Of a DNA stretch of 64,000 nt, positions 49,660-55,962 are shown piece by piece. Numbering within the stretch: the first letter of the stretch is position 1; each line of letters starts with the position of its first letter. The notes under the pieces are model-generated. The model saw only the letters and a program-made list of their open reading frames with translations, had not been told where the DNA came from and searched no databases. The translations under genes and the position numbers were made by a program. The stretch is from Salpingoeca rosetta (taxonomy: Eukaryota > Protista > Choanoflagellata), in assembly GCA_033442325.1 (NCBI GenBank), contig JAWQFM010000007.1, positions 1,396,351-1,460,350 on the forward strand, given 5' to 3'.

Positions 49660-50162
49660 CATAACCCACAACGCCGCTGCTGCTGCTTCTGCTGTTGCCG
49701 CTCTCGTGTGATGATGACTCGCCCCTTTTAAACAATACACAAGACTGCGTGATATGAGATGAGGCTGCTCAAACACAGACAGACAGACAAAGAGAGAGTC
49801 GCAGCAGACACACGGACAGACAGACAGACAGTGTGTGTGTGGCAGAGAGGTGAGGAGCACTCCCACCCCACCACCACAACGAGGAATGAACACGACAAAC
49901 AGTAGTGCAGTGCTGACACGCCTGCGCCACGTGTGTGTGTGCGTCGTCCGTATTTTTGGCGCACCTGGTGGTGGTGTCTTGTGCAACGGCCAACCACTGA
50001 TTTGCGCCTCTGCTTGTCACCCTCCACGTTGACACTCACTCATTCACACCAGCACTGACTTTGAGACACAACAACAGCAGCTACTACCGTCTGCCTGTCT
50101 ACTCTCTCTCCCTCTTGCTTGAATCGTCACTGCCAACCAACCAACGGCCAGCCAGGCACGAA

Positions 50163-51440
50163 ATGGTTGAGAAGAACAGCGCCAGCCACGTCAACGGTGG
50201 CAAGGCGAACGGGGCCACGGCCGCGTCCTCCACCGCCACCACGGCATCTTCGTCGATGCGATTGGGGAAGGGCGCTGTTCGGCGGCGCCGTCGCACCATG
50301 GGCCTGCATCGCAGCAAGAACTTCCTGCAGCGGCAGCGCGCCCGTCTCAACTCCGGATCCAAGAGGGAGAAGGCTCTCTCCTTGCTCCAGCTGCTCTTCT
50401 ATGTTGGCGTCGATATCCTCACCGCCAGCGTCACCGCCACCATCTGGTTCTTCGCCGGTATCTTCCTCTGGTTCTTCTCCCACATCCACGACGCCATCCT
50501 CTCCCGCATTGTCGGCTTCCACTACCTCTACAACGTCTCCTGGGAAGACCCGCGCGTCGACAGGGAGGCCCTCAACCTCACCGAGGACGACCACGTCATC
50601 ACCATCGCCTCCGCATGTACGCCCACCAGCCTCATCAACCACCACCAGAACCATGCACGCTTGCACATAATAATAACTGCACATAGTGCGCGACTCGCAT
50701 GCACGCACGTACACACACACGCACACACACACACACACATCCTAATGCATAGCACTGCGCACAGCAGGATTCACATCCACATCCACACTGACACTAACGC
50801 ACCTCCTTTCCCCCCTTCAACCTTCCGTTGCACTTCTCCTCACATCTGCACCACGTTTGGGCCAACAGGTGACAATGTGCTCGACTTCATCATTGACGGG
50901 GCGCGTGTGACGGCTGTTGACCTGAACGAGTGCCAGCTGGCCCTGTGCGAGCTCAAGAAGGCCGCCATCCTTGAGCTTGGCTTTGAAGACTTCTTCGCCA
51001 TCTTCGCAGAGCAGGACATCAAGCTTCTCAAGGCGTGAGTTTGTTCAGTGTGCCATGCTGATGGTCGTGTGTGTGTGTGTGCGCGTGCGTGTGTGTGTGT
51101 GTGTGTGTGCGTGCGTATGTGTGTGACAATGTAGCACGCCCCATGTGTGCAGCTCAGTCCTCACATCACCGCCTCCTGCCGTCACCATCGCCCACACACA
51201 GCAAATTCGCGCATCTCAAGCGCCACCTTGGTCCCCACTCTCTTCGCTTTTGGGAGCGCACGCTTCGCCGCGGGTACGTTTGTGTAGCGTTCGGCAACCA
51301 TGTGCCGGAGGTGTGTGAGTGGTTTCCAAGGAATGCAGAGGGGCGCAGACATGTGGTGTTGTCGATACAGAGTGTGAATGCTGGCGACGGTTCGCGGCGT
51401 GCACCCAACCCCTTTGTACTGACGCCCCCCTCTCCACTCG

Positions 51441-51514
<74 letters not shown>

Positions 51515-52108
51515 GTTTGGCGGGTTCATGTATTCCGGGTCCTCTGGCTGGCTGGCGTTTATGCTCTTCCGCGTCCTCTTCCCCGTCATTGGCATGGGCT
51601 GGGTCCGCAAGGCTCTCCTCGACGGTGGGTGTGGGAGGGGGTATATGTATCTGTGTATGTGTCTGCGTGTGTGAATCTCCGTGTGTATGCATGTCTGTGT
51701 GTACAATGTGCGTATGCACAACAAGAAGAGTCCGTGCACCTGCCTTTGCTGGTGTTTTTTTTGTGTGTGTGGTAAGAGCGTGTCATGACCAGTCAGCCCT
51801 GCACTGACACGCCCTTCAATACCATCACATCACACGACGACAGGTGTCGACCAGGCCACGTTCCGCCGGAAAGCGCAGCAGCACGCAAAGCGACTGGAGT
51901 TTATCGCTTGGGTTGCAGACAGCGTCCTCGTCCCCATCTGCGCACCGCTCGCTGGCGTCCCCGCAGGTATTCGCGCGCGTGTGTGCACGTGTGGGGGGGG
52001 GCGGATGTGTGTATCTGTGTGTGTGTGTGTGTGTGTGTGCGTGCGTGTGTGTGCGTGTGTGCGTGCGTTTGTGCGTTTGTGCTTGTGTGCACGCTTTATA
52101 TGTGTGCC

Positions 52109-52144
<36 letters not shown>

Positions 52145-53376
52145 CGTGCCTTTCACTTGTTATTCATTGCATTACTCATCACTCGCTTACTTCTGCTTTC
52201 TGGTACCGCCTGCATATGCCATCCTACCCCCTCCCCCCACCTCGTTTCCACCGCCTCCTTCTCCGCAGCGCAACTTGGCCTTGGTGACCACCGCGAGGGA
52301 AATGTGCACACCATTATGGAGCGCGTGTTCCTGCACACGGATGTTGTCAACGACAACTACTTTTTCCTCGGCTACATCCTTGGCAAATACACCCGCACCT
52401 GCTGCCCGCGCTACCTCAAGGTCTGCACTGCGGGGTGTGCACTTCTTGTGGGTGTGTGGGTGTGTGGGTGTGGGTGTGTGTGTGGCTGTGTGTGCGTATG
52501 TGCGTGTGGGTGTGTGTGCGTGTGCGTGTGGGTGTGGGTGGGTGTTTGCGCTGTTGTGTAAATGCCACAGCTTTGCTGTACCCTGCCGTCCGTGCGTGCA
52601 GCCTTATCCAGTTCTTGCATCCACCTTGCCCCTCGGCACCCCCACTGTTCCTTAACCCCCCCCCCCCTCTCCCCAACCTCCACGCATGTTGCTCTTGCTT
52701 TCGCAGGAGGAGCACTTTGGCAAGTTGAAGCGGTACATCCGGCAAAACCGGCTTGACCTGTATCACGGCACGCTTGCCGACCGCTACCGCGACGACATGA
52801 GGCAAGTTGTCCCGCCCACATACACCGCAGCTATCATGCTGGACCATCTCGACTGGATGGACGACGCAGGTGCGCTCCCATATGACTTGTATTCACACAC
52901 ATTCATGCCATTCGCAAACATGCACAAGCAAATACACGTACACTCATACACACAAACACATCTTACGTACACAAAATACACACATACACACAGAGACACA
53001 CGACGCACACACAAACACGCACAACATACCTGTTCACATCCCCTATCCCATCCGCTGTGTGTGTGTGTGTGTGCGTGCAGGGGTGAATGAGGAGCTTGCG
53101 CTGCTGTGGCCGCTGCTTGACGACGATCGCGGCCGCATTCTCTGGCGCTCGTTCAGCGACACGCCGCACCGCGCAGCCCTCAAGTGGATGGACAGCACGC
53201 GTGTTGATGACGGAAGCAGGGACCGCACGGGCATGTACTGGGGAGTGTGGGTCGCGGAGAAGAAGACATGCGGCGTTCACCCCGAGGACATCACGCCTGG
53301 CCTCTTCTGGAGCCCGCAGCCGCCGTTCAGCCTGGTGAGCAGCCGTGCCATATGTGGGGAGGGAGGGCTTGGCTGG

Positions 53377-53454
<78 letters not shown>

Positions 53455-53927
53455 TACTTGTTGTTGTTGCTGTTGTTGCTGTTGCTGCTGCTCTTGTTGC
53501 TGCTGCTCTTGTACTCGTTTAGGTTCTTGTTCTTGCTGTTACTGCTGTTTCTGGCCGCACTGTAGCTGCACGCTCCTTTTGTTGTTATCGACAGCTAATA
53601 GCGACCTCTTCTCGTTCCCCTTGTCTCCGCTGTCACGTTGCGCTCAGGTGGACCAACTGCTGACGGGGCTGCGCATCGTTAGCTTCCCTGTGCTGCAGGC
53701 ATTTCGGTCCGGTATGAGCAAGGCCCAGTGCCTCTCTGGTGTTGCCGCCGATGACCTCTCCCGCAACAGACACGCCCACAAGATTGAGGCCTTCTACCAG
53801 TCCCAGGCAAAGTGCGACCGGCTGCCGCTGCGTGGGTGTGGGTGTGTGGGTGTGTGTATGGGTGAGACGTGTGCGCAGCTGACACCTTCCTATTTTCCTC
53901 ACAGCACGACCGCGCACACACACACAC

Positions 53928-53981
<54 letters not shown>

Positions 53982-55436
53982 AAACGCACGAATGCGTGCG
54001 ACAGGGCATACGACGCGTTTCGCGAGAATTTCCTGCATGCGCGCAAGGCGCTGGCGACATCGCTGCCGCTCAAGAGCGATGAGAAGTTGGTGTGGATTGA
54101 CGTTGGTGCCGGTACTGCCCGCAACCTCGAGTTTTTCCCTGTCGACACCCTCCGCCGCCGCTTTGCAAAGATCTACATCCTTGACATCTCAGCCAGCCTC
54201 CTGTGAGCCTGTGAACCGAGCGGGCATGTGGTTGTGTGTGTGTGCTTGTGTGTGTGTGTGTGTGTGTGCTTGCATTCCTTACTCTCCTATCCTGCCCTCT
54301 TCGTGTTGTTGATGGCGTTCACTTGCCATGTTCTCACCTCCTTGTATTTCTTGACTTTAATTTTCCAGGAACGTTGCCCGCCATCGCATCGAGCGTGCTG
54401 GTCTCTCTGACATTGTTGAGCTTGTTCTTGCAGACTTTACCGACCTCTCCGAAGCAGGGCAGCAGGCCCTCCCAAAGCCAGGCACTGCACATCTCGGTAC
54501 AGCGCATGGCGTTGTGAGTGCGTGTGCGTGTGCGTACCTTGTGTGCGTGTGCATGCCTTGTGTGCGTATATTTCTTTGTCGTGCACGCACACGTGTTTAT
54601 GCGTTTTCGCACACGCACACACACGCACGCACCCTGCCGTCTGCGGAGCCCGACTTACACACAAAAGTCTCACCACTCATGCACTCGGCAACGCCTGTCT
54701 CTCTGTTTGCAACAACAATGCAGTGACGTTCAGCTACTCGCTGTCGATGATTCCAAACAAGACGGCTGCACTGCAGCAGGCCGCCCGCCTCCTCCACCCG
54801 GACGGCGCCATTGGCGTCGCAGACTTTTTCCAAGCAGGGCCAGCCCACCACCAGGTGCTGTGGCGTGTGTGATGTGTATCGATTTGTATGTAACTGCGTG
54901 TCTGTGTGTCTGTGTGTGTGTGTGTGTGTGACTGCGTGTCTGTGTGACTGCGTGTGTGTGCGTGTGTCTGTGTGTGTGTGTGTGTGTGTTTTAGTTGGTC
55001 TCTGTGTTGTGTTGTGTTACTCGTGCATTTGCACGTTGATGTTTGAGCTCACGTCCACCTTCCTCCCTCCCCATTCCCTGTACATGCATGCACACGCATA
55101 CACGCGCACACTCCCCGCCTCTTCATACTCGTGGTGATGTGCTGTTTGCTGCAGCACAAGCCCGTGTCGCGCATGCTGTCTCGCCTGTACGACCTGGGCT
55201 GCAAGCTGTGGTTCCGCCAGGATGGCGTGCACCTGCTGTCGGACCATCTGTTTGACACGGTGCTGGAGCGGGACAACGGCGTGCTGGCCGTGTGCACGGA
55301 GCGCTTCCGTGGGCAGGTGCCCCTCATCCCCGTGCTCCGCCCCTGGCACGGTGTCTGGGTTGGAAAGCGCGCCCAAGACGACGCTGAGGAGGAGGACGGC
55401 GATGATGAGGAGCAGCCGTCCACCAGTCAGGAGTGA
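50163..55436 (+). CDS. BTA1: Bifunctional betaine lipid (DGTS) synthase: N-terminal hydrophobic segment, BtaA (DUF3419, 3-amino-3-carboxypropyltransferase) then BtaB (SAM N-methyltransferase); 13 exons
   Basis: BtaA motifs: [75 protein letters not shown] and DRTGMY. BtaB motifs: [53 protein letters not shown] and WFRQDGV. Confidence 0.92.
53377..53510. repeat. Compound (GTT)n/(GCT)n trinucleotide repeat in a BTA1 intron
   Basis: gttgttgtt...gctgctgct tract. It produces the spurious polyL/polyC/polyV ORFs. Confidence 0.9.
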
Positions 55437-55962
55437 CAACCAAGCAAGCACGCAAGATGAACGCTTGATGTGAAAATGTCACTAGCATTGCCGTTCTCGG
55501 CACTGTTTCTGTGCGTGCGTGTCTGTATGTCTGTCTCTGTGTTCGTGTGTGTGTCTGTGTGAGTGTGTGTCTGTCTCTGTGTTCGTGTGTGTGTGTGTGT
55601 GGGTGTGTTCTAGTGCCATGTCGAACCATCAGATACAATACAAGAGGAACAACAGTGTAAACACGAAAACAAGAACTGATGACGTCACACAAACACTTGC
55701 CTTTTTTTGCTGACTGCGCGGTTTTTGTCATTCCCTGTCAAATTTGACGTGCGGCGGTTTTCTGATTGTATGCATCGAATCATTTTGCACTCCCCAACGA
55801 AACCAGAGAGTCGCTTATCGCGTTCCAGCGCAAGGCCAGCAGCCAGTCTTCCACTCACACACCACCACACCACCCCGCACCAAGGTCATCATCCTTTCGT
55901 TTGGCCGACCCAGCCCGCCAAGCAAGCAAGGAAGCCTGCTGCCCTGATCACGTCCAGCTGTC

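What the first reader, a model, noticed from the sequence alone, without database searches (positions are those of the whole stretch)
50163..55436. Complete betaine-lipid (DGTS) synthase in a probable choanoflagellate, in the BtaA-BtaB domain order
Seen: 13 exons splice into one ORF with an N-terminal hydrophobic helix, a BtaA/DUF3419 domain and then a BtaB methyltransferase domain. Established: BtaA plus BtaB convert DAG and SAM to the phosphorus-free lipid DGTS, a phosphatidylcholine substitute under phosphate starvation, and animals are not known to have the pathway. From memory, fungal and Chlamydomonas BTA1 are B-A fusions, while A-B with an N-terminal membrane segment is the arrangement in stramenopile algae such as Nannochloropsis. 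Inference: this close relative of animals can remodel its membranes with DGTS, and the gene may come from algal prey rather than vertically from the fungal-type gene. It now carries host-style microsatellite introns, which argues against contamination.
Basis: partly seen in the sequence, partly recalled or inferred. Interest (0 to 1): 0.8.

Follow-up and report, generated by a model that had tools for sequence, protein, structure and literature searches.

The report
Choanoflagellate betaine-lipid synthase gene, already known
This is a real, expressed 13-exon gene of the choanoflagellate Salpingoeca rosetta for a two-domain enzyme that most likely makes the phosphorus-free membrane lipid DGTS, but choanoflagellate genes of this kind are already in a published family tree and the proposed origin from algal prey is not supported.

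Summary
Thirteen GT..AG exons (50163-55436, + strand) give one 798-aa ORF. It is 100% identical to the annotated S. rosetta protein PTSG_03719. Transcript contigs and stranded RNA reads reproduce all 12 introns.

The protein has a disordered N-terminus, a hydrophobic helix (about residues 71-108), a BtaA/DUF3419 domain (120-474) and a BtaB-type methyltransferase domain (about 532-777). This is the "type A" BTA1 order.

Six choanoflagellate species carry orthologues, which form one clade (100/99). S. rosetta and M. brevicollis share an intron position. The gene is therefore old in choanoflagellates and is not contamination.

The clade lies inside the short type-A group, with eustigmatophytes, synurophytes, a diatom, a cryptophyte, an apicomplexan and a cercozoan. 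The base of that group is a polytomy. An AU test does not reject choanoflagellates as sister to all the rest (p 0.45). The gene is not fungal-type, but transfer from algal prey is neither shown nor excluded.

Bolik et al. 2023 (BMC Biol) already show choanoflagellates in their BtaA tree, and report the BtaA-BtaB order for the marine organisms in it. No lipid data for choanoflagellates were found, so DGTS synthesis remains inferred. S. rosetta has one unusual substitution, D660H in BtaB. The scan's notes hold no earlier betaine-lipid finding.

The parts
50049..50162 (+). 5' UTR (minimum extent)
   Evidence: Transcript contig X13 begins at 50049. It differs from the window by a 3-nt deletion at 50081 and a CTCT insertion at 50101.
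50163..55436 (+). BTA1-type gene PTSG_03719: 13 exons, 12 GT..AG introns, 798 codons plus TGA
   Evidence: spliced ORF; 100% identity to P0153; RNA joints and contigs.
50163..50372 (+). Low-complexity, basic N-terminal region (residues 1-70), predicted disordered
   Evidence: pLDDT is below 50 for residues 1-52 and 64-69.
50373..50486 (+). Hydrophobic segment, residues 71-108: the likely membrane anchor
   Evidence: Kyte-Doolittle windows of 1.6 or more over 71-108. Most short type-A relatives checked have an equivalent segment ahead of DUF3419 (the Rhodomonas sequence shows none). AlphaFold2 predicts a helix at 74-116.
50520..53262 (+). BtaA / DUF3419 domain, residues 120-474 (exons 1-8)
   Evidence: Pfam PF11899, E 4.9e-76. 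Hits are colinear exon by exon. All 39 columns invariant with bacterial BtaA are kept.
50616..50870 (+). Codon 152 (T|GT, Cys), split by intron 1. The intron position is shared with M. brevicollis, and the residue is a G-to-C change in the SAGxN motif.
   Evidence: same alignment column, phase 1, in both species. Cys in 4 of 6 choanoflagellates, Gly in 88 of 94 sequences.
53747..55370 (+). BtaB-type class I SAM methyltransferase domain, residues about 532-777 (exons 9-13)
   Evidence: Pfam Methyltransf_11/12/25 at 584-691. It aligns over about 255 residues with bacterial BtaB encoded next to btaA (E down to 2e-42). Fold matches include lipid and phospho-base N-methyltransferases.
54490..54492 (+). 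Codon 660 CAT (His), where 83 of 94 family members have Asp
   Evidence: No read or contig differs from the window at this place (table 3).
55437..55505 (+). 3' UTR (minimum extent)
   Evidence: Transcript contigs reach 55505.

Best explanation
The locus is the annotated Salpingoeca rosetta gene PTSG_03719. It is a bifunctional 'type A' betaine-lipid synthase (BTA1).

Inferred mechanism: an N-terminal hydrophobic helix holds the enzyme on an endomembrane. The BtaA/DUF3419 domain transfers the 3-amino-3-carboxypropyl group of S-adenosylmethionine (SAM) to the free hydroxyl of diacylglycerol, giving diacylglyceryl-homoserine. The C-terminal BtaB domain then methylates the amine three times with SAM, giving DGTS.

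The gene is transcribed and correctly spliced in ordinary cultures. It is conserved in at least six choanoflagellate species and has been resident since before S. rosetta and Monosiga brevicollis diverged. It belongs to the short type-A clade found in marine protists and not to the fungal/green-algal type-B group. How the choanoflagellate lineage got it (old eukaryote-to-eukaryote transfer or vertical descent with losses) is unresolved.

Shown here: gene structure, expression, domain content and order, conservation, and phylogenetic placement. Inferred: the enzymatic product, membrane location and any role in phosphate limitation.
For: Gene model and identity. RNA: nine joints seen directly, and full-length transcript contigs from several studies. 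Domains. Fold: mean pLDDT 86, pTM 0.84. Two-domain phosphoethanolamine N-methyltransferases align over about 490 columns, and bacterial phosphatidylethanolamine N-methyltransferase 8ys9 matches with TM 0.78 by target. Nearly all residues conserved in 85% or more of 94 BtaA and BtaB sequences, 24 of them bacterial, are retained. Orthologues are at 63-66% identity in M. brevicollis, Choanoeca perplexa, C. flexa and Hartaetosiga balthica, with a more divergent one in Salpingoeca infusionum. Choanoflagellate monophyly is 100/99, inside a short type-A clade (100/100) that contains Nannochloropsis/Microchloropsis. N. oceanica BTA1 is the characterised type-A enzyme. Intron 1 position is shared with M. 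brevicollis. In 63 of 65 bacterial loci btaB lies directly downstream of btaA, so the A-B order is the operon order. DGTS has been detected in another heterotrophic marine flagellate, Cafeteria burkhardae (bioRxiv 10.64898/2026.09.28.754671).
Against: No lipid or enzyme data exist for any choanoflagellate in the searched library. S. rosetta alone has His instead of the near-universal Asp at position 660 in the BtaB domain. Four choanoflagellates have Cys for the conserved Gly152 in the BtaA SAGxN motif. The effect of either change is unknown. I could not include fungal or Chlamydomonas type-B sequences in my own trees. Phosphate regulation was not testable.
Confidence: 0.8

Rival explanations
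1. One reading: the gene entered choanoflagellates by horizontal transfer from algal prey, for example a stramenopile.
For: The distribution is patchy. The nearest relatives outside choanoflagellates are mostly algal type-A proteins at 40-46% identity. Fungi, the other opisthokonts known to have BTA1, carry the type-B order. In the BtaB tree the choanoflagellates sit next to a cryptophyte and P0173 with moderate support (93, 96*).
Against: In the concatenated careful tree the choanoflagellates are one of about six branches of a basal polytomy, with no supported algal sister. The AU test does not reject them as sister to all other short type-A sequences (p 0.446). The clade also holds non-photosynthetic organisms: Cardiosporidium cionae and a cercozoan. 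Two published HGT surveys of S. rosetta and M. brevicollis do not list the gene, although one supplement was truncated when stored. Any transfer would predate the split of six choanoflagellate species, so prey of living species is not informative.
Confidence: 0.3
2. Vertical descent: a type-A BTA1 was present in an early eukaryote, or at least in the ancestor of choanoflagellates and animals. It was then lost many times, including on the animal stem.
For: The AU test allows choanoflagellates as sister to the rest of the short type-A clade. The gene is old in the lineage, as shown by six species and a shared intron. The short type-A clade spans several supergroups.
Against: It requires many independent losses, and a separate origin or domain swap for fungal type B. 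I recovered no other holozoan or amoebozoan type-A sequence, but my searches were capped and this absence is weak evidence. Bolik et al. favour either two lateral transfers or a very early split, and do not decide between them.
Confidence: 0.3
3. The S. rosetta enzyme is impaired or has a changed product, for example incompletely methylated homoserine lipid, because of D660H in BtaB and G152C in BtaA.
For: His660 is unique among 94 sequences, 83 of which have Asp. Gly152 is kept in 88 of 94.
Against: All other conserved residues are kept. The gene is expressed and spliced. Cys152 is shared by four species that otherwise conserve the protein at 63-69% identity, so it has been tolerated for a long time. 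Residue 660 lies at the start of the predicted strand 659-665. By general knowledge of class I methyltransferases, that end of the strand points away from the SAM site.
Confidence: 0.1
4. The gene is contamination or an assembly artefact from an alga or a bacterium.
For: None found.
Against: The gene lies on a 1.95-Mb S. rosetta contig. It has 12 spliceosomal introns carrying the genome's typical microsatellites. It is present in DNA and RNA runs of the same organism from six studies. Five other choanoflagellates have orthologues.
Confidence: 0.01

Closest known systems
Nannochloropsis oceanica BTA1 (type A; Murakami et al. 2018, as cited) and its N. gaditana / Microchloropsis salina orthologues (P0197, P0198)
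   Same: N-terminal hydrophobic segment, then DUF3419/BtaA, then a BtaB methyltransferase. About 43% identity over about 750 aa. Same short type-A clade.
   Different: The host is a bacterivorous heterotroph and not an alga. The S. rosetta gene has 12 introns. It carries the G152C and D660H substitutions. No biochemical or genetic test exists.
Monosiga brevicollis MONBRDRAFT_36263 and the Choanoeca, Hartaetosiga and S. infusionum orthologues
   Same: Same architecture. 63-66% identity (about 42% for S. infusionum). First intron position shared with M. brevicollis.
   Different: M. brevicollis has 2 introns against 12. There is no flank synteny. The other choanoflagellates keep Asp at position 660 (S. 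infusionum has Gly).
Type B BTA1 of Chlamydomonas, Chlorella and fungi (BtaB-BtaA)
   Same: The same two catalytic domains and the same product, DGTS.
   Different: The domain order is the opposite, and published trees place it in a separate clade. The one type-B fusion I obtained (giant-virus MAG, L083) is 26% identical in BtaA and 34% in BtaB, and falls outside the type-A clade.
Bacterial BtaA and BtaB (two-gene operon, e.g. Rhodobacter; planctomycetes)
   Same: The same two activities and the same A-then-B gene order (63 of 65 loci). Conserved motifs are shared.
   Different: They are separate proteins without the N-terminal anchor, and only 28-36% identical in BtaA.

Membership tests
Type A BTA1 betaine-lipid (DGTS) synthase | BtaA / DUF3419 domain with the family's conserved residues | tested here: met
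   PF11899 E 4.9e-76. All 39 columns invariant with bacterial BtaA are kept. Of about 57 columns conserved at 85% or more, 7 differ, and all but G152C are conservative changes.
Type A BTA1 betaine-lipid (DGTS) synthase | BtaB-type class I SAM methyltransferase domain (FY..Q...YD.FR, GxGTxxxx[13 protein letters not shown] motifs) | tested here: met
   Pfam methyltransferase families at 584-691. It aligns with operon-encoded bacterial BtaB, E down to 2e-42. All conserved columns but D660H are kept. The fold is class I methyltransferase.
Type A BTA1 betaine-lipid (DGTS) synthase | One polypeptide with BtaA N-terminal of BtaB | tested here: met
   Single spliced ORF confirmed by transcript contigs. 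Domain coordinates.
Type A BTA1 betaine-lipid (DGTS) synthase | Hydrophobic N-terminal membrane segment before the BtaA domain (short type-A subgroup) | tested here: met
   Residues 71-108. Equivalent segments occur in the other choanoflagellates, Nannochloropsis, Mallomonas, Cardiosporidium and the cercozoan; the Rhodomonas sequence shows none. Helix 74-116 in the model.
Type A BTA1 betaine-lipid (DGTS) synthase | Groups phylogenetically with experimentally characterised type-A enzymes | tested here: met
   It lies inside the short type-A clade with the Nannochloropsis/Microchloropsis orthologues, at 99* in each domain tree and 100/100 in the concatenated tree. The N. oceanica protein itself was not in my set.
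Type A BTA1 betaine-lipid (DGTS) synthase | Converts diacylglycerol and SAM to DGTS | not testable with these tools
   Needs lipid analysis or heterologous expression. No such data were found in the library.
Type A BTA1 betaine-lipid (DGTS) synthase | Induction or use under phosphate limitation | not tested
   The RNA runs are of unknown growth conditions.
Type B BTA1 (fungal / Chlamydomonas) | BtaB domain N-terminal of BtaA | tested here: not met
   The order is A then B. No B-before-A protein occurs among 324 retrieved relatives.
Horizontally acquired gene of algal origin | Recipient clade nested with support inside a donor (algal) clade | tested here: inconclusive
   Polytomy at the base of the short type-A clade. 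AU p 0.446 for choanoflagellates as sister to all others.

The most novel reading that the evidence does not exclude
Choanoflagellates really make DGTS with this enzyme, and the type-A gene was inherited vertically from the common ancestor of choanoflagellates and animals or earlier. Betaine-lipid synthesis would then be a membrane-remodelling ability that was lost on the animal stem, and not a recent import.
Probability: 0.2. Interest if true: 0.55.

Novelty: already known. Interest (0 to 1): 0.3.

Why it matters
[quoted passage not shown] That bears on how bacterivorous marine flagellates cope with low phosphate, and on which lipid pathways animals lost. The gene, its domain order and its place among marine type-A BTA1 proteins are already in the literature at tree level. 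What remains open is biochemical proof and the route of acquisition. S. rosetta has genome-editing tools, so both the lipid phenotype and the odd D660H residue can be tested directly.

Tried and rejected
1. Getting the spliced protein into the search tools. No single reference exists, so I used the stop-free stretch 50373-51032 (end of exon 1, in-frame intron 1, exon 2) for the one representative search. I then worked from the protein ids it returned.

2. Fungal and Chlamydomonas type-B sequences. None came back from any search. P0070 and P0078 looked like type B but proved to be truncated long type-A proteins. A giant-virus type-B fusion served as a poor proxy.

3. NCBIfam on single exons gave nothing useful.

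4. HGT survey papers for S. rosetta and M. brevicollis do not mention DUF3419, betaine, PF11899 or PTSG_03719. One supplement was cut when stored.

5. Synteny with M. brevicollis: none found.

6. Pfam on neighbouring long ORFs: no hits.

7. Giant viruses as a vector. The ESM Atlas labels a look-alike cluster as viral. However, IMG/VR holds only one divergent type-B relative, and two unlabelled short type-A proteins on long contigs have cellular eukaryotic neighbours. I dropped this lead.

8. 'Archaeal' DUF3419 proteins at about 45% identity (for example P0053) are truncated fused type-A proteins on short contigs, and are not prokaryotic donors.

9. GC3 comparison with neighbouring ORFs was uninformative.

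10. Murakami 2018 is not held in the library.
Full report
**Observation.** I read 49800-55800 and assembled the exons in a script. Thirteen exons with canonical GT..AG borders join into a 2397-nt ORF of 798 codons plus TGA. An independent exact spliced mapping of the database protein onto the window gave the same 13 exons. The product is 100% identical over its full length to P0153, NCBI 'hypothetical protein PTSG_03719 [Salpingoeca rosetta]', which lies on a 1.95-Mb contig. The host is therefore S. rosetta. This agrees with earlier notes of this scan.

**Expression.** Twenty public runs of the same organism hold the stretch. Fifteen of them hold 0.33-0.46 of its sampled words, which is about the exon fraction of 0.45. 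I laid four runs on 49900-55800.
- Nine introns appear as explicit GT..AG joints, in stranded raw reads and in contigs.
- Introns 3, 7 and 9 are flanked by skipped repeats. They follow from the record coordinates of 2722-nt and 2578-nt transcript contigs, and from loose ends that read into the next exon.
- First mates lie on the - strand, as expected for an RNA from the + strand.
- Transcripts reach at least 50049 to 55505.

**Protein.**
- Pfam on single exons gives colinear DUF3419 pieces.
- On the whole protein, DUF3419 covers 120-474 (E 4.9e-76) and generic class I methyltransferase families cover 584-691.
- AlphaFold2 with a 60-sequence family alignment gives mean pLDDT 86 and pTM 0.84. 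The model has a disordered N-terminus, a long helix at 74-116, the BtaA domain, a linker helix at 498-519, and a Rossmann-type domain at about 532-777.
- Foldseek's best matches are two-domain phosphoethanolamine N-methyltransferases aligned over about 490 columns. A bacterial phosphatidylethanolamine N-methyltransferase (8ys9) matches with TM 0.78 by target. This fits a lipid head-group N-methyltransferase.
- Residues 71-108 are hydrophobic, and most short type-A relatives checked have a similar segment before DUF3419.

**Conservation.**
- All 39 columns that are invariant between choanoflagellate and bacterial BtaA are kept.
- In alignments of 94 sequences, 24 of them bacterial, nearly all columns conserved at 85% or more are kept.
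- There are two notable exceptions. Gly152 of the SAGxN motif is Cys in four of six choanoflagellates. Asp660 in the BtaB strand 'xDxVTFSYSL' is His in S. rosetta only (83 of 94 sequences have Asp).
- The CAT codon at 54490-54492 shows no variant in reads.
- I regard neither change as disabling, but the His is a stated risk for the methylation step.

**Relatives.** The representative search with a stop-free piece of the gene, followed by word searches with full-length hits, gave 324 proteins.
- Choanoflagellate orthologues: M. brevicollis, Choanoeca perplexa, C. flexa and Hartaetosiga balthica at 63-66% identity, and Salpingoeca infusionum, which is more divergent.
- The next relatives, at 38-46% identity, are 'short' type-A proteins of about 690-800 aa. 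They come from Nannochloropsis/Microchloropsis, Mallomonas, Leptocylindrus, Rhodomonas, the apicomplexan Cardiosporidium cionae and a cercozoan.
- A second group of 'long' type-A proteins (about 900-1000 aa, with an N-terminal extension) comes from Cymbomonas, Amorphochlora, dictyochophytes and Chrysophaeum.
- Prokaryotic BtaA reaches only 28-36% identity.
- 'Archaeal' proteins at about 45% identity are truncated fused type-A proteins.
- No B-before-A protein was among the 324.

**Trees.**
- Separate BtaA and BtaB trees (94 rows, quick method) and a concatenated careful tree (42 rows, 649 columns) agree.
- The six choanoflagellates are monophyletic (100/99) inside the short type-A clade (100/100).
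- The base of that clade is a polytomy of about six lineages.
- Holding all 26 non-choanoflagellate short type-A sequences together costs 0.99 log-likelihood units (AU p 0.446).
- The data therefore do not tell old transfer apart from vertical descent.
- The only type-B fusion I could obtain, from a giant-virus MAG, falls outside the type-A clade in both domain trees.

**Age in the lineage.** M. brevicollis has two introns and S. rosetta has twelve. The first intron of each lies in the same alignment column and the same phase. None is shared with Cardiosporidium's eight introns. Flanking genes are not syntenic.

**Literature.**
- Oishi et al. 2022 define type A (N-terminal BtaA, C-terminal BtaB) and type B. 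They place green-algal type B near fungi and far from prasinophytes and secondary algae.
- Bolik et al. 2023 list choanoflagellates among the taxa in their BtaA-domain tree. They report that the BtaA-BtaB order goes with marine organisms and BtaB-BtaA with freshwater ones, with planctomycetes at the base of the marine clade. They leave open two lateral transfers versus an early split.
- I found no paper with lipid data on choanoflagellates.
- I found no listing of the gene in two HGT surveys.
- DGTS is reported in the heterotrophic flagellate Cafeteria.

**Mechanism.** By established knowledge of BtaA and BtaB (summarised), BtaA transfers the aminocarboxypropyl group of SAM to diacylglycerol, and BtaB adds three methyl groups. 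In 63 of 65 bacterial loci btaB follows btaA directly. The type-A order is therefore what a simple read-through fusion would give, and one planctomycete MAG carries such a fusion. The membrane anchor, the product and the phosphate link are inferred for S. rosetta.

**Verdict.** The gene is real, complete and expressed. It is a member of type-A BTA1 by every sequence-level criterion. The function is probable but untested. The origin is unresolved. It is already known in outline.

Noticed in passing
L073:3941-5980 (uncultured Planctomycetaceae MAG, 1.08-Mb contig): A single 679-aa ORF carries both a BtaA and a BtaB domain, in the type-A order. It groups with other planctomycete sequences and not with eukaryotes, so it looks like an independent bacterial fusion.
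   Followed up: partly
L083:2660-4594 (IMG/VR giant-virus MAG GVMAG-M-3300009001-5, contig GC 23%): A 645-aa ORF with BtaB (about 19-251) before DUF3419/BtaA (271-643). This is a type-B BTA1-like fusion on a giant-virus MAG contig. The ESM Atlas also labels a 131-member look-alike cluster as mostly Nucleocytoviricota.
   Followed up: partly
window 54490-54492: His660 replaces an Asp kept in 83 of 94 BtaB sequences, including the other four close choanoflagellate orthologues. It is unique to S. rosetta in my set, and it is present in both DNA and RNA.
   Followed up: partly
window 52934-53024 (intron 7) and 54513-54567 (intron 11): RNA reads and high-depth contigs join these CA-rich and GT-rich tracts on opposite strands and run on into unrelated sequence. 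Fixed G>C differences occur at 52993 and 52995. This is most likely transcripts from other loci that share the microsatellite, or template switching. It recalls the scan's note on complementary (GT)n/(CA)n tracts in introns.
   Followed up: no
window 50081-50101 (5' UTR): One 2017 transcript contig lacks 3 nt at 50081 and has an extra CTCT at 50101. This is length variation in a CT-rich tract between cultures or assemblies.
   Followed up: no
P0053, P0190-P0193 (metagenome proteins, one binned as 'archaeon'): These standalone 'DUF3419 family' proteins at about 45% identity end inside the BtaB domain on contigs of 4-5 kb or less. They are truncated eukaryote-type fused BTA1 proteins that were probably mis-binned. 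This may explain 'archaeal' BtaA entries in data sets.
   Followed up: partly
P0010 / L082:2001-4961 (Cardiosporidium cionae): An apicomplexan parasite of sea squirts has a short type-A BTA1 with 8 introns. None of its intron positions is shared with S. rosetta.
   Followed up: partly
P0173 (EukProt, species not given): A 715-aa short type-A protein with a transcriptome-style name like those of the choanoflagellate data sets. It groups with the cryptophyte in the BtaA and concatenated trees, and sits in a polytomy with the choanoflagellates in the BtaB trees. Its source organism could change the picture.
   Followed up: no
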